Shown: piece by piece, positions 10,586 through 64,000 of the stretch
How positions within the stretch are numbered: position 1 is the stretch's first letter
How the letters are laid out: every line of letters begins with the position of its first letter
Source: Adineta vaga
Taxonomy: Eukaryota; Animalia; Rotifera
Reading direction: 5' to 3'
Assembly: GCA_021613535.1 (NCBI GenBank)
Contig: CP075497.1
Location: forward strand, 1,364,001 to 1,428,000
Length of the DNA stretch: 64,000 nt
Notes under the pieces: generated by a model
What the model saw: the letters and a program-made list of their open reading frames with translations, nothing else
Database searches by the model: none
Told to the model about the DNA's origin: nothing
Program-made: the position numbers and the translations under genes

Positions 10586-12846
10586 TCTCAATATGATATT
10601 CACAAATCTATCAATCAGTGACGTAACCATCCAAGAAAATTTAACTCTTCCAAGATCAGCAAAGTTTGTTGCTAATATAAATTACAGTTACAATTCTATT
10701 CTGAAGAATCAGAAGAAAAATGTTGATAGAAATATGAAAATCATGTTTTGTTTTTCTTTAAAATAATTGATGAGAATATTCAATGATATCTGACTTTTTC
10801 TTTTTCTTATTGTGACTTTAAAAAGTAATTGTATTTAATATTTTGTTGTTTTATTTATATAAGGAAATAATGATGAGTGTCATTTGGATAAAGAATAACA
10901 AAATGAATGAGAAAGTGTTGAGTAAAGAGAGATAAGTGTCTATGATGGATAGATGTGTGTAGACATATGTTTTCTTTTAAAAAGAAAAGTTAAAATTAGA
11001 AAGAAATTCAATATTGATTTAAAAGATTTTCTAAATGGAACTTTTTATTTTTGTTTCTTGTTCAATTTATATGATTAATAATATGTTACTTGAAGTCAAA
11101 GTAAAATTATTGATGATAAATTAGAGAAAATGGCATGAAGAAATGTGTCGGCAACGGATATGTGTTTCTTTTTCCTTTTTATTATTTCTATGATTGGAAA
11201 AAAAGAGGAGAAAGAGAGAGTGACATATGGGAAAAGAACGATAAGAACAAAGATTTCATAGGGCAGATGATGATGATGATGATGATCGTTCGGAAGTTGA
11301 TCTACACTTTGCTTATTAACGACAGACGGCGTCCGACTAGAAACAATTCTCTATTTGACTAGTTGAAGATCATCAGAGATGAATAGATTGTTATCACGCT
11401 AATTGGAAAGAATAAAGTGCTCAATCGATTCTCATTGCTTTTGTTTATAGATACATCACACAAGAAAACACCTTTAGATCGTCAAGTGGGATTAACATTT
11501 GATAAGAATCTTTTTATTAGAAATAGAGAAGAAAAAAAAAGAAGAAGTTATTCTAAGATGAAAATACTTCTTTCAATCGATTGAATAGAGGTCAATAGGA
11601 AATCAAATATAACGAAAGATGAACGGAAAAGCCCGATCATGCGCTGACACTCTTTAGTTAATTTGTTCATGCGTCCACTTCTCGTCCGTAGTGGAATTCC
11701 ATTCTATTGGATTTCTTTCCGGAACTAACTGAGACATTCTCTATAGACTATATAGAAAAAAAGAGAGATCGGTTTATTGACTTTGGAGTAGATCAATGTC
11801 TGCATTGATGATCTTATTAAGAAAAAGAAAAAATCTTATTCATTTCAATGAATTTCTTTTTCTTAAAAAATTGAATTAACATCTAAATGTCAATTATGAT
11901 TTGTTCATTTATTCTTTTTTAGATAAAGAAACGAATCAATTTTTCTTAAACAAAAGAAAAATAAGTTTCCGGCATTTGTGAAAGTGTTGAAAGGTACTTA
12001 TCTCTTTCGAAAATGATTATGTAAAACAAGATAAGCAATTTAACAATGTTAAACTACCGGAAGAAAATGCACATTGCTTGTCTCATCAATCATTTTCTTT
12101 TTCTTTTCATTATAATTTTCTTTTTTTATTTTACTATTTTGAAAAAAAAAAGAATTTATTGATTTGATCATATTTCTGTTGATTTAAGAGAAAATGAAGA
12201 TTCTTCATCAATGACTTGATCATTAACTTAAGGCAATATTCCGTTCTCAATAGTATTTACCCTCTTCTTTCTTTTCATATAAACTATTTTTCTTTCCTTT
12301 TCTCTTTTCTCTTTTCTCTTAATAACGTCGAAATATCATTGGTAATCATCCAATGAGGAAAAGAATATTTTATTTGTTCTGTCTTTCTATCCGTTGGCGT
12401 TGTTAACAAGCTACTCGAACATGAATGTAAAACATCGTGTCTCGTTGCAGTGGCACACGACTTGTCAACCAATGAGATTTTTTTTTCTTTTTCTTATCGA
12501 CAAATAGTAGTTAGAAGAGAGAATAACGATCATGTTAGACAAACTAACAGACGAACGTGTTTTTTTTCTTTTCTCTCTTCTCTCTTTTCCGACTCTTTTT
12601 TTCTTCTTCTTCTAATGTCTATTCGTTTAACAATATATTAACATTGGTAACTAGGAAAGAGAAAAAAGAAAGACGACTATTACAACTACGACTGTTCGCA
12701 TTCTTGTCGAAACACTTGCAAAATCATGTTAAGATATTAAAACTTGTTTTCAGATTATTTCTTTCGTTCTTTTTTTTTATTTTGAAAAACCATTTTCTTT
12801 ATTTTTATTCAGATAAAAAAAACCAAAAGAAATAAATCTTATTTCA

Positions 12847-14149
12847 ATGAATAGAATAGCAGGTATCAATTCAACAGATTCGAATCCATATTCATCAATT
12901 AAAGTAAATTAATCTTATATTTTTATTGATGTTTCATTGTTTTTCTTCATCAAGGATTCGAATATGAATGTTGTTGGATTAACATCAGATTGTACAAGTT
13001 TAGTTAATTCTCATCCATGGCGTCATCCTTATTCGAATCCTTATATCTATGATGCAGCTACAGCTGTTGCTTTAGTTGGCTATACTCCATATACAACTGG
13101 GTAAAGTATCGATATAACATTTTTTTGTTTGAGTAAAAAGAAGAATAAATGGAATCACTTAGAGAAAAAGAGAAGAATAGCCTCAAGTATAATGAAGTGA
13201 ATGTATTAGTCTCTAAACGATGCATATCTATTTCTCATATTGAACTGATGCATAGAAAATGAAGATCATTTTCCAATGAGACACATTAGAATTTGAGAAG
13301 TTATTTTCTCTTTTTGTTTTTAGTTATTCTCCTCACATGGATTTAGCTGGAAGAAGAAAAAATGCCACACGAGAAACAACAGCAACATTAAAAGCTTGGT
13401 TATATGAACATCGAAAAAATCCTTACCCAACTAAATCAGAAAAAGTTTATTTAGCTATTATGACTAAAATGACACTAACACAAGTTTCAACTTGGTTTGC
13501 AAATGCAAGAAGACGATTAAAAAAAGAAAATAAAATGACTTGGTCACCAAGAAATAGGTAAATTTATTTATTTTTCTTAGAAAAATTTTCTTTTTGTTTT
13601 CTTTTCTTAAAAAGAACAACCGATGACGATGATGATGATAGACATGATGAAGAATCCAATAGTTCTCAATCAGATAATCAGTCGAATTCTCCATCTATTC
13701 AAACCAATCAAATTCCATCATCATCATCAACAACAACAACAATTCAAAGATCATTTCATTATTTATCACCACCATTAACTATTCTTCAACATCATCAAAT
13801 TCAACCCGAAAATATTTCAACAGGTTTATCTCATTTCAATCAATCATTCATTTCAATCGAGAATCTTTTCTTTGTAGATGAAAAAAGTTTAAAAAGAAAA
13901 TTTGATGAAAATTGCTCCGAAGAAAGAAAAAAACGTTGTGGAATTTGGTCACTTGCAGATATGGCGGAAACAAATCATAATAAAAAACAAATCAATTCAA
14001 ATCAACAAGATGAACAAATAAGATCAACTTCAATTGCTTCATCATCATCATCATCTTCATCTTCTTCATCATCTTTATCTCCAACATCATCATCACAACA
14101 TTTAGAAAAAGTTCCATCAATTGTTGGTGCATTTAAACCATTTAAATGA
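12847..14149 (+). CDS. Irx: Iroquois-class TALE homeobox protein (~5 exons)
   Basis: Homeodomain [28 protein letters not shown]...[22 protein letters not shown], followed by an acidic patch and an IRO-box-like [10 protein letters not shown]. Confidence 0.95.
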
Positions 14150-15034
14150 TTTTAAAATGAACTCACTCATTATCGAGTGTCAGATAAATTCATTCCGCAT
14201 AAAATTAAACTCATTAATAAAGAAAAAAAAAGATGCCGGTCATAACAGTGAACATAAACTTATCTTTATATATCTTCTCGTCTTTATGTTGTATTTCTTT
14301 TCTCTCTCACTCTCTGTTTTTTTGTTCTTTATTCATTCGATTAATCTTTTCTTTATTCAAAACAAAATTCAATAATTCTATCAATATGAACTTTCTTTTT
14401 TTTCTTTCTCTTCTGATGAAAATCAATCTTTGATTATGTTGATATTTGTTTATATGAACAGACTTTTTCATTGACTGCAACTTATAAATATATGTGAATA
14501 TGCAGATGTTTCACTTGAGAATGATATATCTCATTAGATGAAATAGAAAGAAGAGAATTGTTTATTTAATTGAATCGAATAGATCAATTATTTATTAGAT
14601 TTACTTTTGAAATAAAAGAGAACTGCACGAAGATCGATTATTATCACCTTTTTTTTTTTTAAAGAAGTGAATCTTTATTTGATGATCAAATAAAAAGAAA
14701 AGTCAATTGAAATAAATTAACGTTTCATAGATCTCGTGATGTAATTCAGTTTATTCTTTGCGTGACCTGTCAAAGATTAAAAGAAACGTTTGTTCCATCT
14801 CACAGGTGTCTTTTTCTTTTGACTTATATTCAATAGGAGAAAAAAATTTCTTGCGAAGAAGAAAAAAAAAGATCTCTTCTATTTGGATTAATCTAAATAT
14901 TTATTTGAAATTAATCTAAACAATATTTCTCTTCTCTTTTAACAATAAATGATTGACACATTTAAAGATCAATCTAATCATCTTGAAAGATTAGACGAGA
15001 AAGAGAGAATGTCAGACTTGTTGAATGATATCTC

Positions 15035-15074: not shown

Positions 15075-16484
15075 AACTAATCAGATATGAGAATATTCAT
15101 CTGAGAACAAAGAAAAGATTTGATTTTCATCAAAGTCAATCGAATTTTCCTTTGGGAATTCATTTTCTTTTTCTCATTATTATTATTTCAAAGATTAAAA
15201 TTAAAATTGAAACGAAAAGAAAGTGAGAATGTTATCTTAACTTATTTGTCTAGACAAATAAACAAAAACATATTCAAGTGTATCACTTTCTCTCTCTCTC
15301 ATCACCACTTCACTAAACATATCCTCAACTAGAAAATACTTTTATCCATTAAATAAATCATTTATCATATAAACTTTTAATTGTTAATAGTCGAATATTT
15401 TAACTTATTTACATTTTATGGAGATATGATTATTATTAATCACTAAATCATGTGTTTTATCGTTCAATGACGAATCGTTCGAATGGATTAATGCATCAAC
15501 TAATGGCAAAGAAGTGGAGAAATTATTGATCATTCATTAAAAGTCGCATGAATACTTTCTTTTACTTAACAATCTCTACTTAAGATAGATATAAGAAACA
15601 ATTCAATGCAGATTTTTCTAGAAATGATCAATCATGGAATTGTAAATGATTTAAAAAAAAAGAAGATATTACTATTTTCATGATTTGTGAATGTAAGGAC
15701 ATCTGTGGATTATCATTATCAGTATAGTTCTTTTTGATTCTACGAAAAATGAAGAGATAAATTATTGTCTAAAAGTTTGTATTTCTTACAGTCGTGCGTT
15801 ATCTATGACGGAATTACGGATGGAACTCATGAGTAAGAGAAAAACGACCAATTTTTCTCGTTTTTTAATAATTTTACACAAACTTTTAGATAAAAATCTT
15901 GTCTGTTCGCGGGGCTTCATGTCATGTTGTAGATGAAGCGATCTCTATTATATAGTAATTCATTTTCACTCAAAATAGATCTATAAGAACGAGCAGAGGG
16001 AATATTAGACTATTGGTGATTCATGTCAATGAATATTAGAAAACGAAAGCTTTTTTCATGATTTCCGAAAAAATCGGATGATTTATTGGCAACCCTTGAT
16101 ATTTTTTATAAGTAATTTCAAGAATTGATGTACTTGAAGGAATGGAACAACTTTGAAAAAGATATGGCAAGTTTAGTAAAATCTTCTAAAAGCGAACATT
16201 AAGATTTAGTTCTCACCCTCAAATCGTAGCAAAACAATAATTTGAACTTTTTTTTTCTATTCATTGAATCGTTTTTGTAATTAATAACAATTGAAATATG
16301 GACCATGTTTAAAAAGAGATCTGTCATCCTCTTTCTCGATTTTAAAATTTTTACATCGACAAAAGATTTCATTGGTGTAGAAATGATCCAATAGAAAGAA
16401 GAAATTTAACTAACAGATGATTTCTTTTTCCTAATCTGAATAAAAGATTTTCATTTGAAATTTCAATTCGAAAGAGAACGTTTC

Positions 16485-18475
16485 ATGGATCGAAATCTTC
16501 GTGGAAATCATCGATTTCGTTTAAATGAAGATTCCATATCAAATGATAATGGTAAATTGCATATATTTGTTAAATTAACTGATTCATGTATGAAAGCAAT
16601 TGAAACTTATATGAAACAAAATAAAAAAGGAAATTTATCAAATATTAAATTTAATTTAACTGGTGGAGTAAGATTAATTTATCGTTTATTTATTTATTTA
16701 TTTATTTTCTATTTGATTTTTATTTTCAAAGGAAATTTCAATTCCAATTAATAATAATGAAAGAAAAACATATTCTTTTCAAATTTCACCGGAAGATAAA
16801 ACACCTGAAGTATTTGAATGTATTAAACAAGTCAATCGAGAGTAAATCTTTAGAAGAAAACAGTACCGATAATTTTAGAAACTATTTTATTTTATTTAGT
16901 CAACTTGAAAGTTGTGGAACAATTGAACAACGAATAAGTATTCATGCACAAGAAGATGTTTATTCTATGACAAAAGTTAAAGTTACAGAATTTCAAAAAC
17001 ATGAAGAATTAACGAAAAAACAGTTCGTATTTATTTTTCAAAAGAATTTCAAATAAAAGATTTTTCTTTTCAAGAACGAAAGAAATTGGTGAAACTTCCA
17101 AAGCAATTTTAGAAAAGAAAACTCATAAATCATCAAATCCTCGTTCATCAATATCAACATTGAATAAAAATAAAACAAGAATTGGAACAAATCAAGATGA
17201 ACGTCTAAGTCCAATTCCAATTCCAATTCCAGTTCCAACAACAAATCAACCATCATCATTCGAAAGACCATTAAGGTTTGGGTTTCTTGATTTGATTTAT
17301 TTAATTTTGTTTTATTTTAAAGAGAAAGACTTGTTCATTTATTAGCAGCAAGAACTTATAAAAAACCCGATCTAATTGCACGATTAAAAACTGGTTTGAA
17401 AAATTTGATTTTCTTTGAAAACAAATTTCTTTTTCTATTTAAATAGAAGGTGGAATACGTGATGATGAAAAAGAACAATTAGATTCAATTTTATCTTCAA
17501 TATCAACTCAATCGAAAACTGGTGAATTTATTCTTTTAAAACAACTTTTAACAAGTGGAGAAGTTAATTATGATTGGCCTTTTTATCCAAAAGGAGAAGC
17601 AAATATTGTTCGAAAGTATTTTCAATTTCTTTTCGTATTTAATTTCACTATTTTGTTTCTCAAGAAAAATCAAAGAACTTCAAGCGAATACAACAAGATC
17701 AACAATAAATAAAACAAATAATGAAGTAAAAATTCTTTCGTTTCTTAAAAATCAAACTACTCGTTCATTTCAATAGATTACATCGAATTCAAAAAGTCTT
17801 ATATCTAATTCAAATTCTTCAATAAAACCGAAAACAATAATTTCAAATGAAAAATCTTCATTAGATAACGAAGAATCAACACAAAATCCGTTAAGTGATG
17901 AAAAAATGCAACAATGTAAAAATATATCTTTGAATATTGAAGTAAAAACTCTTTTCAATTCATTTAGTATCAGATATGTTGGATAAATTAACAAATGCAA
18001 TATCTGATAATGATAAATTTCATGAACAGTATGTTTTTTATATGTTAAATAGATAATTTTCATATGAAATTTTCGTAAATAGATTACTAAATGAAAATGA
18101 TTCAATTGATGAAAATGATTTAGATGAAATTGAAAAAGAATATCATCGTCTTGTTCCTGAATATAATCATTTAATTGATTATTTAAATGAAATTTCACAA
18201 AAATTTTCATTACTTCAACAAGAATTTCATGAAGATCAAGTTTGCTTTAATTTATTTTTTGAAAGAAAAAATTCGTTTGTTTTTTCTTTTAGAATAATGA
18301 AAAAGCGAAGAAAATTGTTGACGAATTTTTCTCATGTGAAACCAATGATGGATTTTTATTAAAACGTCAACGTGCTTTTCAATTACATAAGAAATTAAAT
18401 CATTTTCAAAAACTTTTACAAAAATCTTCTCCTACAAATTCTTTTTCTTCTGATGATGATGATGATGATAATTAA
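16485..18475 (+). CDS. ELL: RNA polymerase II elongation factor ELL
   Basis: IFVKLTDSCMKAIE in the N-terminal domain; RPLRERLVHLLAARTYKKPDL; C-terminal occludin/ELL-like helix (EKEYHRL...KRQRAFQLHKKLNH). Confidence 0.85.
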
Positions 18476-18506
18476 TTAAATCTTTTCTTTTCTTTCTTTT
18501 TCAGAT

Positions 18507-21303
18507 ATGACTTCATCAACATTTCGATTAAATCAACTTCGACAATTAATGAAATCGAAAGAATATTTTCATGATATCATTCATGCATATATTATTCCAA
18601 CAACGGATCCACATCGAGTAGATTTTCTTTTCCTTTTTAAAAAACAAAATTCTTTTTATCTTTCAAATAGAATGAATATGTTGCTGATCGATATAAAAGA
18701 AGAGAATTTATCTCAAATTTTACAGGATCAAATGGTTCTTTTTTGATTTGAGAATAAATGAAAATATTTTTCTATTTTCATTTTCAATAGGCACAGCTGT
18801 GATTACTGATAAAGATGCTCTTTTATGGACTGATGGAAGATATTTTGCTCAAGCAGAAAAAGAATTAGATTTAAATTCATGGAAATTAATGAAAGAAGGA
18901 ACAAAAGATGTTTTATCAATACCAAGTTGGATTTCTAAAGTAAAGAAAATTTATATTTAAAGAAATATTTAAAAAATATATAAATTTCAGAATTTAGAAA
19001 AGAATTCATTAATTGGTTGTGATCCACAATTAATTTCAATCAATGAATGGGAAGAATGGAATAAAACATTTGAACAAACTGATAAACAATTAGTTCCAAT
19101 TAATACTAATCTTATTGATATTTTATGGGCAAAACAAAGACCAGAATTACCAAATAATCAAATTTGGAAATATGATCTTCAATTTGCTGGTCAAATATCT
19201 TTTCGCATCTTTTTCTTGACTTTTCTTTTCATTTAGGTTTAACAATAACTGATAAATTATCTAAAGTTCGTTCAAAAATGAGTGAATATCAAGTCAATCA
19301 TTTAATTATTCATCGAACAGATGATGTTGCTTGTAAATATTTCTTTAGTTTTAATTTTCTTTCAGAGATTTTGTTTTTTAAAGGGTTATTTAATTTACGT
19401 GGTGGGGATATTCCGTTTAATCCCGTTTTTTTATCATTTGCAATTCTTTCATTTGATTCTGTCAAGTAAATTTTAATTGAAGAAATTTATATCAAAGATT
19501 TTCTTCTTTTAATTTAGATTATTTGTTGATTTAAATAAATTATCAAATGAATTAAAAAAAGATTTAGAAAAAGAAAAGATTTCGTTATTTTCCTATGATT
19601 TATTTTATGAAGAATTGAAAAACGATGTTCAATTACAAGATAAATCACAGAAATTTTGTGTATTATATTCAAAATTGAAGTTCTTTTTTTCTGTTTAAAA
19701 GAAATATTTTCTATTTAGACATCATCAATATGTAATCATGCTGTTCAAACAATAATTCCAAAAGTAAATTGACGAAAATAAAGGATTTTATTTTGAAATT
19801 TATTTTTTAAAAGAAACAATTAGTTCTTCAAGATGATATTGTTTATGATTTAAAATCAATTAAAAATGATTGCGAAATTCAAGGAATGAAATTTGCTCAT
19901 GTAAATTGCTTTTTGTTTTCGAAAGAAAGTTCTGTTTCAATTGAATTATTTAGATAAAAGATGGTGTAGCTCTTTGTTCATATTTACATTGGCTTGAAGA
20001 AAATGTATTGAATTTTTTGATAAGAATATCAAATTGTTTAGAAGAATTTCATTTGATTTAGATTGAAAATATTTCTGATATAAGCGAATGTTCAGGTGCT
20101 GAAAAATTAAGATTATTTCGAAGGTAAATTAATAAAGTATAGATGATTTTGATAGAATTTCATGTTTTAGTGAACAAATCAATTATTTGTATGATAGTTT
20201 TGAAACTATATCTGCTATTGGAAAAAATGGAGCAATTATTCATTATAAGTTCGAAATTACTTTTAGTTTAATTTTGAAGAAATGAAATGTTTTAGACCAA
20301 CAGAAGAATCTGATACAAAACTTGATAATAATCAATTATATTTAGTTGATTCAGGTGGACAATATAAGTAAAGATAGAAAAGATTTTGAATAGAACGAAA
20401 TTTTGTTTGATTTGTTTATTAAAGAGAAGGAACAACGGATGTAACACGAACAATTCATTTAGGTCAACCAACAGAATTTGAAAAGGTTTTTCTTTTCGAT
20501 TGAAAAATTTAAATTATTTTCTTGTTTTTCTTTATAAAAATCTAAAGGAATGTTTTACACGTGTTTTAAAAGGATTTATTTCATTAGCATCATGTTTATT
20601 TCCTCCCAATACAATAGGTGCACGATTAGATTCATTTGCACGTCGAGCACTTTGGGATGTTGGATTAGATTATCGACATGGCACTGGACATGGTGTTGGA
20701 TGTTGTCTTAATGTTCATGAAGGTTTCTTTTATGATATTATTTATTGTTTGATAATAAAATGTTTCTTTTTCAAAGGTCCACAATCAATTGGAACAAGAA
20801 TTCGATCGGATAACTATTTAGTTCCCGGAATGATTCTTAGTGATGGTAAAGATTTTCTTTGACAAAAAAAAACTAAAACTAAATAGTTTTCAATGAAAAA
20901 GAACCTGGTTTTTATTCTGATGATAAATTTGGTATTCGAATTGAAAATTGTGTTCTTGTTATTAAACAAAAATCTAAAGTTTGTTTTTTAAAAGGAAAAA
21001 ATGAATTTAATATTTAAAATGAAATATTTAGTATGCTTATTATAATGATGATTGGTTAACATTTGAACAATTAACAATGGTTCCAATTCAACGGAAATTA
21101 ATTCAACGTCAATTATTAACTGATGAAGAAGTTTGTTTAAATCATTTCTTAATTTGATTTTGATTTCTTTTTCTTTTTCAAAGATTAATTATATAAATGA
21201 ATATCATAAAAAAGTTTATGAATTACTTTCCAATGAAATGAAAAAACAAGGTGTTAAACAAAGTTTATTAGATTGGCTTGAAATCAATACACAACCAATT
21301 TAA
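18507..21303 (+). CDS. XPNPEP1: Xaa-Pro aminopeptidase 1 (M24B), many short introns
   Basis: Motifs ALLWTDGRY, DSGGQY.EGTTDVTRT, YRHGTGHGVG, EPGFY and GIRIEN. Confidence 0.95.
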
Positions 21304-21420
21304 TTCTTTCTCTCTTACTTGTGTTTTTAAAATTTAAATCAAACATCTTTTTAAAAGATTTCTTTTTGATGATTTTAGATCGTTTTTAATTCCTTGAATT
21401 TTATTTAGAATGGTAAATCA

Positions 21421-23534
21421 ATGTTTAATAAAATTCGAGTAAAATTCAATTGGTTTATTAAAACCAAAATTCTTTATCAAGAAATGTCAACTAAAACAAT
21501 TCGTATTGGTTTATGTCAATTAAATTCTCGTGATGATAAAGAAGAAAATTTTCGAATTGGACAAAAATTGATTAATGAAGCAAAAGAACAGAATGCTAAA
21601 GTTTGTTTTCTTTGCTAATTTGATAAGAAAAAAATTGTTTTCAAAACTGTAGATTGTATTTTTTCCTGAAGCATTCGATTATATTTGTGATTCGAAATTA
21701 GCGACAATTGAAAAAGCTGAACCAATTGATGGACCACTTATAAATGGATATCGAAAATTAGCAAAAGATAATCAATTATGGATTTCATTGGGTGGTTTTC
21801 ATGAACAAGTTCGATGTTTTTAAAAGTTAATTAATCAAAAATCTGTTTTTGTTTTCTTCGTCTTTAGACAAAAGATAAAAGTCGTATTTTAAATAGTCAT
21901 TTAATGATTAATGATCAAGGTGATATTGTTGGTCATTATTCAAAAATTCATTTATTTGATGTTCAAGCTGGCTCATTAAATATTCGAGAATCAGATTATA
22001 CACAATCTGGTTCAGTAATTCTTAATCCAATTGAAACACCATTCGGAAGAATCGCTCTTGGAATTGTTTGTTTCCCTTTCTTTTTTATAAAAGATTTGCT
22101 TCTCTATTTCTTATTTAGTGTTATGATCTTCGTTTTGTTGAATTTGCTCGTTTATTAACATCATCAGCAACAAAAGGTGCACAAATTCTGACTTATCCGA
22201 GTGCATTTACTAAACATACAGGAGAAGCTCATTGGGAAGTAAGTGACACATAAGGACTTTTTTTTTTGAGAAATATCAGAAAGAAAACTAATTAATATAA
22301 ATTCAGATTCTATTTGATAAAGTTCAATAAAACTTAAGTATAATTTGACATGAGATAATCTTTGGATTACAATAGTTATGATAAGAAGTTAATTAATTAA
22401 TATTCTATCAATCAAAATATAATTTAAAAGGATGCTTTTATTGTTTAAATAGAAAAAATGTTCAATTCAAATCATTTGTTTTATTTAGATATTACTTCGT
22501 GCACGTGCTATTGAAAATCAATGTTTTGTTATCGCTGCTGCTCAAGTTGGTTCGCATTCGAGTAAACGTGAATCTTATGGACATTCAATGGTTAGTTATC
22601 ACTGGTTTTTGTTTTCAAATGAAAATCCATTCTTTCAATAGGTTGTGGATCCATGGGGAAATATTTTATTAGATATGGGTTTAGAATATCCATCAATTCG
22701 TACAATTGATATTGATCTTGAACGTATTAAAATAATCAGAGATAAAATGCCAATTATTGAACATCGTCGACTTGATTTATATTCTTTAATATCAACAAAA
22801 AATATGATTTGTATTAAAAGGAAAAGATTATTTTCAAATGAAAAAAGAAGTCTTTTTTTCTCTTTCTTTTTCCAGTACCAATTAATAATAAAGATGACGA
22901 GAAAATCTCGTGGGGACAATTACAAATTACAGCCGGACAGATATTCTTTCGTTCAACATTATCCATGGCTTTAGTCAATAGGAAACCAGTTATACCGGGA
23001 CGTAAGTTCATATGAACATTACCGAAATAAATATCATATCTTATTTTGTTATGTTTTTATGAAATTCAGATGTGCTTGTATCGCCTATTCGTTGTGTTGA
23101 ACGATTTTCTGATTTAAATTCTGAAGAAATTCATGATTTATTTTTAAGTACACAATTAATTGCAAAAAAAATTGAAGAATTTTTTCAAGCAAAGTCATTA
23201 AGTATTGCAATACAAGATGGAGAATATGCTGGACAAACTGTTAAAGTAATGATTTTTTCTTAATTAATTTTATTTGAAGAAGAAAACAAAAACTAATGTA
23301 ATTTTTTTTAGCATGTTCATGTTCATATTCTTCCACGAAAAGCTGATGATTTCGAAGATAATGATACGATTTATCATGAGGTTTGTTTTCATAAATAATA
23401 AACAAAACATTTGAAAATTTCTTTTGAGTTTTTAGTTAGCTCATCATGATAAAAAAGAAAAAGGATGGAGAGAAGAACAAGAAATGATTAATGAAGCAAA
23501 AGTTTTTAGAAAATTATTTTATCCTGATCAATAG
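21421..23534 (+). CDS. NitFhit: Nitrilase-Fhit fusion protein (NitFhit)
   Basis: Nitrilase triad FPE / YSKIHLFD / ICYDLRF, spliced in frame (intron ~22811-22875) to Fhit: [32 protein letters not shown]. Confidence 0.92.
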
Positions 23535-24314
23535 TGATTGTTTTCATCATATCCAGAATTCGTCTTTAAATTTGATGAGACAAACTTCTGAGACTTTTTT
23601 ATATTACGAACAGAAAAATAAAATACAAAAAAATCTCATCTACATTGTTTGTAGTATGAAACGGTATTCTCATTAAAAATATCGACCTATTTAAATAATG
23701 ATAAGATCAGAAATTTAAAGAACACGAGTTTTCTGTTGTAAAACGCTGACAAAGAATATAGTATTAAGAAACCATTTTATATGAGATCATAAAGATCATT
23801 TATATGCATAATAAAGTCTATACTTACCAGTAAATACTAAAGATCAATACTGTTTACTCGTTATTACTCATGATAATTATGAATGTAAAACTATTCATTT
23901 GAAATGAATATAATTTGATTGCCTGATTTAGTTTTTAATAACAGAAGCTCTTCATAACAATTCAAATGTATGTTCCTATAGTTGAGTTTCTTATTTATTT
24001 AAATTATGCTTCATATCACAAAAGAGAATGATATAAAATGTAGATCATAAATTTTTGAAGTAGCCAAATGATTTCATATTAGAAAAGTACATTACGGGGG
24101 ATTTCGAATACAATTTAAAAAAATCAACATTATATATCATTTGTCTCATCAATTAAATTTATTTTCCATCCCATCATTGAAAGAAAAAGTAAAACTTTAT
24201 TACATAAAAACAAAGAACCAATATCATCTTTTTATTTATTTCGATAAATATATTAATAATTGAATTGTTAGTAAAAATAGTGATAGCAACACAATTATGC
24301 ACAATGGTTTAATG

Positions 24315-26081: not shown

Positions 26082-27377
26082 TAATAGGTTGTCCGAAAAG
26101 TTCGTGCAACTCAAATACTTTTAAATCGTGAAAGGATGATAATAGTTTTTATTGAATGTAATGACCTCCACTAGCAACCACACGTTGCCAGCGGTCATGC
26201 AAATGCTCTATACCGTAACAAAAAAAGTTTGCATCAAGATCATTTAAATAGTCCTCGACAGTTCTTATTGCTTCATTGTCGGAGTTGAAATTTTTGCCCC
26301 GAAGAAATTTTTTCAAATGTGAGAATAGATGATAATCGCAGGGTGCAATATCCGGAGAATAAGGTGGGTGATTCAGTTCGATGAGGCCACATTGTCGAAT
26401 TGCAGCTTGAGCAATGTTGGACTTGTGAACAGGCGCGTTGTCATGAAGAAGCAGCACACCACGACGAACTTTGCCACGACGTTTTTCCTGTATAGCAGAA
26501 TGCAACCGCTCGATGATTGATGCATAATAGGGACCATTCATTGTAGCACCACGTGGTAGATAATCGGTCAGCAGAACACCATCCTTATCCCAAAATACGG
26601 TCACCATACGTTTTGCAGTTGATCGTTGTCGACGTTGTCGAGTTGGTGTTTCTTCACCTGATCTCTTCCAGATTTTGGCCTCCAACTGAGTGAGAGGATC
26701 ATAGTGGTATATCCAAGATTCATCACCGGTCACGATGCGGTCAAAAAATTTCGATGGATCTTCTTCACTTTGTTGAATAAGCTCTTCACAACAATCCACT
26801 CGATTTGCAAGTTGAAGTGGTGTAAGCAATTTTGGCACCCAACGTGTGCAAACTTTCTTCATCTCTAAATGATTCTTCATGATTTCATGGATGGTGGTTT
26901 TTGGAATGCCTAATTCATCAGCTACCCGACGAACAGAGATTTGTCGATCACGCATCACAACTCGTTCAACAGCTTTAATATTTTCATCAGTGGTCGTGGT
27001 TGATGGACGACCAGATCGAGGTGCATCGTCGAAGCCACGTTCTGGATCTTTAAATTCAGCTACCCATTTAGCGACAGTGCGGTACGATGGAGCAGAGTCG
27101 CCGTAAACATCGTCCAGCTCTTTGCTGATTTCAGTGGCATTTAGGCCTTTTCGGGTGAAAAACTTTATGACTGCTCGATATTCGATATTTGACATATTTG
27201 AAATATCACTATACAAAATGACTAGAAAAACGTTTTATTTCTAATTAAAGAAACGCGCCAATTAGATCAAAAACTGTATATTGTAATGATATTGCGCCCT
27301 CTATAGAATGACAGAAAGTAAATGCCTTACGGATGTACCGTGAAATGAGTTGCACGAACTTTTCGGACAACCTATTA
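26082..27377 (-). mobile_element. Full-length mariner transposon (1296 bp)
   Basis: Perfect 32-bp TIRs taataggttgtccgaaaagttcgtgcaactca, TA target duplication and an intact ORF. Confidence 0.97.
26149..27216 (-). CDS. Mariner transposase, DD34D
   Basis: Motifs WVPKLL, TGDESW, HDNAPVH and YSPDIAPCD; 34 residues between the second and third Asp. Confidence 0.97.
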   Translation of the reverse strand: MYSDISNMSNIEYRAVIKFFTRKGLNATEISKELDDVYGDSAPSYRTVAKWVAEFKDPERGFDDAPRSGRPSTTTTDENIKAVERVVMRDRQISVRRVADELGIPKTTIHEIMKNHLEMKKVCTRWVPKLLTPLQLANRVDCCEELIQQSEEDPSKFFDRIVTGDESWIYHYDPLTQLEAKIWKRSGEETPTRQRRQRSTAKRMVTVFWDKDGVLLTDYLPRGATMNGPYYASIIERLHSAIQEKRRGKVRRGVLLLHDNAPVHKSNIAQAAIRQCGLIELNHPPYSPDIAPCDYHLFSHLKKFLRGKNFNSDNEAIRTVEDYLNDLDANFFCYGIEHLHDRWQRVVASGGHYIQ

Positions 27378-63229: not shown

Positions 63230-63960
63230 TGTTGGTCAGTCATTTGTTGATAAATACGTGGAAGAATCTTTTAATTCGATTTCTTTGTCTGTTCAAGTTA
63301 TGTTTGAACTTTTTTTCCAATAAACTCAAATGATTTCCGATTGGTTTATTCTGAAAAGAAAAAAAACGAAAGAAATTTTTTAAAATTGAATACAAATTGC
63401 AATCATAGTATCAATAACTGTTTGATAATTGATTTAGTTCATTCGATGATCCATGAAATAAAAAACTTCACTTTTATTTTCTTCAGGACGATTTTCAAGT
63501 TTAAGATATTCTAAATGAATATTTACCAAATGAACAAATCTATTCAGAAAAAAAGATGAAAACAGATATTATCTCTTACTCTTTTTTTAAGATCTACAAA
63601 ATTGATTTTAACTGTTAAAACATCTTCATAACTATTATCAATCACCTACATTCGTTTCATATCGATTTGTATGTGTTATAAATGTGTAGGATAAGACATG
63701 GACAGTTTCAAGAATATGATAATATAGAGTTTCCTGTAGTTGATTTCACATGTTTGTAGGAAACGAAACTCATGTATTTTGATTCAGTAAGATTTTCTAA
63801 TCGAAGTTCTTTCTCAAACTGCTCCATAGCAGAGATTCGAGTAAACTCAATTTAACCTTACAAATCTTTCCGTTCTCATGCGAGAAATTTAGTTGATCTT
63901 TATTCTTTGATTTCGCAATGCTGAGAAATGATGATATTTTTTTTCATTAATAGAAAAGTG
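63230..63960 (-). pseudogene. Possible decayed multi-exon coding remnant, unidentified
   Basis: Intron-like spacers with splice signals separate coding-like stretches that contain stops; no family recognised. Confidence 0.25.
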
Positions 63961-64000
63961 TTGCTCTGGTAGATCAGTGTTGCCACCGATCCACACGATT

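What the first reader, a model, noticed from the sequence alone, without database searches (positions are those of the whole stretch)
16485..23534. Candidate trans-spliced operon 1: ELL - XPNPEP1 - NitFhit
Seen: three co-oriented housekeeping genes. The ELL stop (18475) is only 31 nt from the XPNPEP1 ATG (18507). That gap is almost entirely a polypyrimidine tract plus acceptor (tcttttcttttctttctttttcag|atATG), with no GT donor, no AATAAA and no room for a promoter. XPNPEP1 to NitFhit is 117 nt, U-rich, with tttag acceptors at ~21378 and ~21408. Known: bdelloids perform spliced-leader trans-splicing, and nematodes and tunicates use it to resolve operons. Inference: this is a polycistronic unit. 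The 31-nt gap recalls C. elegans SL1-type operons, where 3' end formation and trans-splicing compete.
Basis: partly seen in the sequence, partly recalled or inferred. Interest (0 to 1): 0.85.

Follow-up and report, generated by a model that had tools for sequence, protein, structure and literature searches.

The report
Conserved bdelloid ELL-XPNPEP1 operon candidate
In bdelloid rotifers two unrelated housekeeping genes sit only 26-62 bases apart with a splice acceptor between them, and a fossil cDNA copy shows the first gene's message ending at that acceptor, so they probably form a sea-squirt-style operon cut apart by spliced-leader trans-splicing, a layout I found no published report of in rotifers.

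Summary
ELL (16485-18475), XPNPEP1 (18507-21303) and NitFhit (21421-23534) are intact, spliced and expressed. The gaps are 31 and 117 nt. The first gap holds one pyrimidine tract plus AG, with no GT for 132 nt upstream. The genome (Adineta vaga-like) has 42 spliced-leader (SL) exon copies.

The ELL-XPNPEP1 gap stays 26-62 nt, with an acceptor, in 13 bdelloid lineages. An intronless ELL copy in A. steineri lies inside an SL RNA gene. It follows its parent up to the gap's acceptor AG and then has an A-run, the signature of Ciona-type operons.

NitFhit is weaker. Its order is kept, but the gap is 352-1545 nt in relatives. One RNA contig ends XPNPEP1 exactly at the acceptor at 21378.

Not shown: an SL joined to XPNPEP1 or NitFhit, a read-through RNA, or a single promoter. 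The RNA contigs were monocistronic, and the tool skipped the key gap as a repeat.

Odds: ELL-XPNPEP1 operon about 0.75-0.8; NitFhit as third cistron about 0.5. The scan has already noted similar operons on other DNA of this genome. This is a new member of a known kind.

The parts
16485..18475 (+). ELL (RNA polymerase II elongation factor), 11 exons, 485 aa; presumed first cistron
   Evidence: open spliced model; Pfam ELL on two exons; spliced RNA contigs in 3 studies; single match in the genome
18475..18480 (+). ATTAAA hexamer overlapping the ELL stop, 24 nt before the acceptor; possible poly(A) signal, not conserved
18476..18506 (+). 31-nt ELL-XPNPEP1 gap: pyrimidine tract, acceptor AG at 18503-18504, 2 nt to the ATG; no donor at normal intron distance
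   Evidence: same layout in 12 other lineages
18507..21303 (+). XPNPEP1 (cytosolic aminopeptidase P), 19 exons, 612 aa; presumed second cistron
   Evidence: Pfam Peptidase_M24; 13 introns listed as RNA joints
21304..21378 (+). XPNPEP1 3' UTR as far as seen in RNA, ending at the strongest acceptor of the second gap (AG 21377-21378)
   Evidence: run X11 contig ends at 21378; acceptor score 9.8 bits
21395..21408 (+). second, weaker acceptor (AG 21407-21408) 12 nt before the first NitFhit ATG
   Evidence: 5.2 bits
21410..21442 (+). short out-of-frame upstream ORF overlapping the first NitFhit ATG; an upstream ATG at this place in 5 of 5 species
21421..23534 (+). NitFhit fusion gene, 10 exons, 464 aa from the first ATG (conserved 21-aa N-terminal extension), 443 aa from the second ATG at 21484; possible third cistron
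   Evidence: Pfam CN_hydrolase and HIT; RNA contigs start at 21466
23617..23622 (+). canonical AATAAA after the last gene
   Evidence: RNA contigs end at about 23600-23609 by length bookkeeping

Best explanation
ELL and XPNPEP1 form one RNA polymerase II transcription unit, started in the 2.3 kb upstream of ELL and resolved by spliced-leader trans-splicing, with little or no intercistronic DNA (Ciona-type, like C. elegans SL1-type operons). SHOWN: gene structures, gaps, acceptor, lack of a donor, conservation, SL RNA genes, separate mature mRNAs. INFERRED: the polymerase reads through the ELL stop; the 23-nt SL is joined at AG 18504, giving a capped XPNPEP1 mRNA with 2 nt of its own 5' UTR; the ELL mRNA ends at or next to the same AG and is polyadenylated there. 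Because the pyrimidine tract and branch region lie in ELL's 3' end, one precursor probably yields either ELL or XPNPEP1 mRNA, as argued for Ciona (PMC1488885). NitFhit carries its own acceptor in most species. In this genome the gap has shrunk to 117 nt and XPNPEP1 RNA reaches that acceptor, so it is about an even bet as third cistron; in relatives it may be a separately promoted, trans-spliced neighbour.
For: Gap of 26-62 nt with pyrimidine tract plus AG in 13 lineages of Adineta, Rotaria and environmental bdelloids. No donor scoring above 3.4 bits at 40-75 nt in the 10 lineages printed, while introns here are 47-68 nt bar one. 42 SL exon copies; in fetched loci 43 of 47 matches are followed by the SL intron. 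The A. steineri intronless ELL copy matches its parent exon by exon and through the 3' UTR to the best acceptor AG, then has an A-rich run where the parent has a T-tract. Control: an SL-fused intronless copy in this genome begins exactly after a pyrimidine tract plus AG in its parent. XPNPEP1 RNA contig of run X11 ends at AG 21378.
Against: No SL loose end is listed at 18505, 21379 or 21409 (8 rows not shown), and no contig bridges either gap. The SL-plus-XPNPEP1 pattern found nothing in metagenomes. The window's own acceptor is modest (5.8 bits, below the lower quartile of cis acceptors). The fossil cDNA is from another species, and its A-rich tail has three readings. XPNPEP1-NitFhit gaps are 352-1545 nt in relatives, with AATAAA/ATTAAA hexamers in them. 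NitFhit contigs start at 21466, downstream of both acceptors.
Confidence: 0.72

Rival explanations
1. Overlapping but independent units (or a hybrid operon): XPNPEP1 has its own promoter inside the last exons or introns of ELL, and its outron is removed by SL trans-splicing at 18504. The acceptor is real, but most XPNPEP1 mRNA does not come from the ELL promoter. The same may hold for NitFhit.
For: Mature RNA contigs are separate in every run. Contigs over the XPNPEP1 5' end are deeper than the ELL contigs (61-76 against 14), though the tool warns that depth cannot rank genes. Hybrid operons exist in Caenorhabditis (10.1101/2021.09.24.461604). Relatives leave 352-1545 nt before NitFhit.
Against: It needs a promoter inside coding sequence, kept in 13 lineages while the gap never opens beyond 62 nt. 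An ELL message ending at the acceptor already requires transcription up to the boundary.
Confidence: 0.17
2. Plain compact packing: the T-tract is ELL's U-rich 3'-end element, the AG is incidental, and XPNPEP1 starts from a nearby promoter without trans-splicing.
For: The genome is AT-rich. 11% of intergenic windows match the window's acceptor score, and one control flank (after NitFhit in the window) also holds an 8.3-bit AG. No SL was seen.
Against: The AG closes the tract in all 13 lineages despite divergent gap sequence; background is 5% or lower in 10 relatives; four other NitFhit 3' flanks lack a good acceptor.
Confidence: 0.07
3. Cis-splicing: the AG ends a 5'-UTR intron, or joins an ELL donor to XPNPEP1 to make a fusion transcript.
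For: Good donors exist further upstream (18240, 18275). For the second gap, GT 21323 to AG 21378 would be a normal 56-nt intron.
Against: No GT within 132 nt of 18504. A join from 18240 hits a stop after one codon, and the AG-to-ATG phase varies between species (0, 2, 8, 13, 14, 16, 17 nt). Run X11 reads 21184-21378 unspliced.
Confidence: 0.04

Closest known systems
Ciona intestinalis operons without intercistronic DNA (Satou et al. 2006, PMC1488885)
   Same: Unrelated genes, same strand, under 100 nt apart; upstream mRNA ends at the AG of the downstream acceptor followed by poly(A); one SL; canonical AATAAA not the rule.
   Different: Different phylum and SL sequence. In Ciona the SL junctions and dicistronic cDNAs were shown; here the 3'-end evidence is a retrocopy in a sister species plus one contig end.
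C. elegans / C. briggsae SL1-type operons (10.1101/2021.09.24.461604; Williams et al. 1999 as cited there)
   Same: No or almost no intercistronic region; the common SL is used; 3'-end formation and trans-splicing share one site.
   Different: The characterised worm cases have a canonical AATAAA (PMC1488885); here only an unconserved ATTAAA. Worms also have an operon-specific SL2; I found one SL exon type, but my search could not see an unrelated one.
Oikopleura and chaetognath operons (PMC1488885; PMC2481426; PMC12460157)
   Same: Gaps of 3-30 nt, housekeeping genes, no operon-specific SL. Chaetognaths are fellow gnathiferans, and the under-250-bp rule used there is met by both gaps in this genome.
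   Different: There the downstream genes were shown to carry the SL. A. steineri has two acceptors 31 nt apart, so an Oikopleura-like short spacer is possible in that species.
Relict-SL retrogenes of dinoflagellates (PMC5585692, search listing only; otherwise own knowledge)
   Same: Intronless gene copies with an SL remnant before the start codon.
   Different: The bdelloid copies sit inside SL RNA genes, behind the SL promoter and, for ELL, in front of the SL intron.

Membership tests
SL-resolved eukaryotic operon | Member genes on one strand and very close (under 100-250 nt) | tested here: met
   31 and 117 nt. ELL-XPNPEP1 26-62 nt in 13 lineages; XPNPEP1-NitFhit meets it only in this genome.
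SL-resolved eukaryotic operon | Organism has SL RNA genes and trans-splices | tested here: met
   42 copies of the rotifer SL exon (sequence from PMC3795323, Table 1), followed by GT and a shared intron; an SL-fused cDNA copy starts at its parent's acceptor.
SL-resolved eukaryotic operon | Unpaired splice acceptor before each downstream start codon | tested here: met
   XPNPEP1: yes in all lineages. NitFhit: acceptor present, but a cis donor is possible here and in A. steineri.
SL-resolved eukaryotic operon | SL joined to the 5' end of downstream mRNAs | tested here: inconclusive
   Only assembled contigs were available; they break at 18546, 18584 and 21466, and short loose ends were not listed. 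Metagenome pattern blank.
SL-resolved eukaryotic operon | Polycistronic precursor detectable | tested here: inconclusive
   No bridging contig, but the tool skipped 18437-18500 as a repeat.
SL-resolved eukaryotic operon | One promoter, upstream of the first gene | not testable with these tools
   Needs CAGE or H3K4me3 data; A. vaga H3K4me3 ChIP-seq exists (PMC8885841).
Ciona-type / SL1-type operon (no intercistronic DNA) | Upstream mRNA 3' end coincides with the downstream acceptor | tested here: inconclusive
   Indirectly met: the A. steineri ELL retrocopy ends at the acceptor AG plus A-run; the X11 XPNPEP1 contig ends at AG 21378. No poly(A) read was seen in this genome.
C. elegans SL1-type operon | Canonical AATAAA just upstream of the shared site | tested here: not met
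   ATTAAA in the window; AATAAA in 2 of 10 relatives; none of the hexamers sought in 4.
C. elegans SL2-type operon | About 100-nt intercistronic region and an operon-specific second SL | tested here: inconclusive
   The 31-nt gap is too short. The 117-nt gap is mostly XPNPEP1 3' UTR. A second SL could not be sought without raw reads.

The most novel reading that the evidence does not exclude
Bdelloid rotifers have an old, genome-wide class of operons without intercistronic DNA, of which ELL-XPNPEP1 is conserved across Adineta and Rotaria. In addition, SL-capped mRNAs from such genes are occasionally copied back into SL RNA genes, creating intact intronless genes behind the SL promoter that record the trans-splice site and 3' end of the parent message.
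Probability: 0.45. Interest if true: 0.75.

Novelty: new member of a known kind. Interest (0 to 1): 0.6.

Why it matters
Rotifer SL trans-splicing has been known since 2005, but operons were listed as not determined (PMC2481426, Table 4), and my searches found no paper describing them. A 2025 paper names rotifers only in a joint sentence on trans-splicing and operons (PMC12460157). A junction conserved in 13 lineages gives one defined locus where the question can be settled with existing public data. It would add a second gnathiferan phylum, beside chaetognaths, to the test of whether operons arose once in that clade. It would also give an old example for asking how 3'-end formation and trans-splicing share one site, and it affects how RNAi, knock-outs and gene annotation in Adineta are read. 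The SL-gene-borne cDNA copies offer a way to read trans-splice sites from DNA alone.

Tried and rejected
Read laying on four runs: contigs only; no SL junction and no bridging contig listed. I considered reading the shared NitFhit contig start at 21466 as a transcription start, and set it aside: the XPNPEP1 contigs of two runs likewise start at 18546, one base after a variable site, so such starts are probably assembly-graph breaks. The SL-plus-XPNPEP1 pattern in metagenomes was blank. A search for short XPNPEP1 N-terminal proteins returned only intron-containing DNA contigs. No second copy of ELL or NitFhit was found in this genome, and other M24 hits are 40-47% paralogues, so no ohnologue comparison was possible. 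No Didymodactylos or monogonont ELL was named among the hits. An ELL-XPNPEP1 fusion protein was rejected on frame. The 2005 rotifer SL paper is not held. Spliced models were searched exon by exon, by reference; the joined-protein search was left out.

Full report
Setting. The window is C6:1364001-1428000 of a 100.8-Mb, six-contig assembly. The size, the 47-68-nt introns and the closest protein relatives (Adineta, Rotaria) point to the bdelloid Adineta vaga; that naming is my inference.

Observation. The three genes are real and intact. ELL runs 16485-18475 (11 exons, 485 aa), XPNPEP1 18507-21303 (19 exons, 612 aa) and NitFhit 21421-23534 (10 exons, 464 aa). Exon-wise Pfam scans give ELL, Peptidase_M24, CN_hydrolase and HIT. 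Models were searched exon by exon, by reference; the joined search was left out. The first gap is 31 nt with one AG at 18503-04 and no GT. The nearest GTs upstream, at 133-188 nt, score below zero as donors. The second gap is 117 nt to the first ATG, which starts an N-terminal extension conserved in five relatives. Its best acceptor is at 21378 (9.8 bits), with a weaker one at 21408. An Iroquois-type homeobox gene ends at about 14150, leaving 2.3 kb for a promoter before ELL.

The organism trans-splices. The rotifer SL exon, taken from PMC3795323 Table 1, has 42 genomic copies with one mismatch and none in the reversed control. They are followed by GT and a shared intron, often in divergent pairs. 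One copy lies 40 nt beyond the window's end.

RNA. Four runs from four studies were laid on 15950-21900. All are assembled contigs, and RNA is the tool's guess, but they skip the predicted introns. Three runs each give separate ELL, XPNPEP1 and NitFhit contigs. By length bookkeeping, ELL contigs end at 18021, 18349 and about 18469; XPNPEP1 contigs start at 18546, 18546 and 18584 and end at 21295-21378; NitFhit contigs start at 21466. No SL loose end and no bridging contig is listed. The test is weak: the tool skipped 18437-18500 as a repeat, eight loose-end rows were not shown, and contig starts coincide with a variable site at 18545. One detail is suggestive: the deepest run ends the XPNPEP1 contig at 21378, the G of the best acceptor. 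Separate mature mRNAs are expected under both the operon and the independent-gene readings.

Conservation. The order ELL, XPNPEP1, NitFhit is kept in Rotaria magnacalcarata, R. socialis, R. sp. Silwood1, Adineta steineri and one metagenome contig. ELL-XPNPEP1 adjacency is also seen in R. sordida and six more environmental lineages. In all 13 lineages the stop-to-start gap is 26-62 nt and reads stop, pyrimidine tract, AG, 0-17 nt, ATG. Against a matrix built from 37 cis acceptors of these genes, 10 relatives score 7.9-13.7 bits, which 0-5% of equal-length intergenic windows reach; the window scores 5.8 bits (11%). The lineages are related, so these are not independent trials, but the gap sequences differ freely apart from the acceptor. 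The AG-to-ATG distance changes phase between species, which excludes a conserved fusion protein. The second gap is not conserved in size: 352, 517, 518, 638 and 1545 nt. An acceptor 22-36 nt before the NitFhit ATG is strong in three relatives and weak in two.

A fossil cDNA. A. steineri carries, besides the normal locus, an intronless ELL copy that matches the parent exon by exon at 87-97%. Upstream of its ATG lie an SL-gene promoter region and an SL exon relic; downstream lies the SL RNA intron from about +7 (81% over 80 nt, E 2e-16). So the copy sits inside an SL RNA gene. At its 3' end it follows the parent for 18-19 nt past the stop, through the pyrimidine tract to the best-scoring AG, then has a 10-nt A-rich run where the parent continues with a T-tract. 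The run can be read as poly(A), as a short poly(A) plus a target-site repeat, or as XPNPEP1 5' UTR reached after a 31-nt loss. The first two put the ELL 3' end at the acceptor, as described for Ciona (PMC1488885); the third means read-through past it. All three leave no room for a separate promoter in the gap. The 5' junction lacks 13 nt expected from the parent's acceptor, so it does not prove that ELL itself is trans-spliced. A control in this genome shows that such copies can record real sites: an SL exon fused to an intronless immunoglobulin-like ORF begins exactly after a pyrimidine tract plus AG in its parent.

Mechanism. Most likely one transcript starts before ELL. The SL is joined at 18505 to give XPNPEP1 mRNA, and ELL mRNA ends at or near the same AG. 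Since the acceptor's tract lies in ELL's 3' end, one precursor probably gives one message or the other; this follows the argument made for Ciona and is not tested here. NitFhit is joined by the same logic in this genome if XPNPEP1 RNA really ends at 21378; in relatives it has room for its own promoter. The main rival is an XPNPEP1 promoter inside ELL with a trans-spliced outron (0.17). Incidental AG (0.07) and cis-splicing (0.04) are unlikely.

Comparison. It works like a Ciona or SL1-type operon. Membership is not proven, because the SL junction, the precursor and the single promoter were inconclusive or untestable. It fails the AATAAA feature of worm SL1-type operons. Literature searches found no description of rotifer operons; most subscription papers are outside the library. 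The scan's own notes list several similar clusters in this genome, some reporting SL junctions. I did not check those claims and do not count them as support.

Verdict. A real, conserved feature, and a new member of a known kind in a phylum where I found none reported. Interest 0.6.

Noticed in passing
L017:9840-11330, L018, L027:5840-7380, L028, L029 (A. steineri): Intronless ELL copy with an open frame of 376-420 aa inserted into an SL RNA gene between exon and intron. The divergent partner SL exon is fused directly to the ATG of an intronless aminotransferase ORF (418 aa).
   Followed up: partly
L037:2551-3400 (G000:C6:4522650): SL promoter and exon fused to an intronless immunoglobulin-like ORF; the parent at C1:2484596 has introns and a pyrimidine tract plus AG exactly at the fusion point.
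   Followed up: partly
window 63950-64000 (-): 3' part of an SL RNA gene whose exon lies at C6:1428040-1428062, 40 nt beyond the window.
   Followed up: partly
L035:1195 (+), L032:264 (-), L033:6036 (+): Three SL exon copies followed by GT but by a different shared sequence instead of the usual SL intron; variant SL genes or an old insertion.
   Followed up: no
window 21410-21483: NitFhit has a conserved 21-aa N-terminal extension (basic and hydrophobic, like a mitochondrial transit peptide; inference) and, in 5 of 5 species, an upstream out-of-frame ATG shortly after the acceptor. This may set the ratio of two isoforms.
   Followed up: partly
window 18515-18575: RNA contigs over the XPNPEP1 5' end are about three times deeper than those of the gene body in two studies (61-76 against 18-23); unexplained, and the tool warns against ranking by depth.
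   Followed up: no
window 12800-14150 (+): Iroquois-type homeobox gene upstream of ELL; the same neighbour in all relatives with enough flank.
   Followed up: partly
   Followed up: no
window 26149-27216 (-): 355-aa intronless ORF in a stretch of 41% GC against about 27% for the window; possibly foreign or mobile.
   Followed up: no
G000 whole genome: ELL and NitFhit gave one true match each and XPNPEP1 no close second copy, so this block seems to lack an ohnologue.
   Followed up: partly
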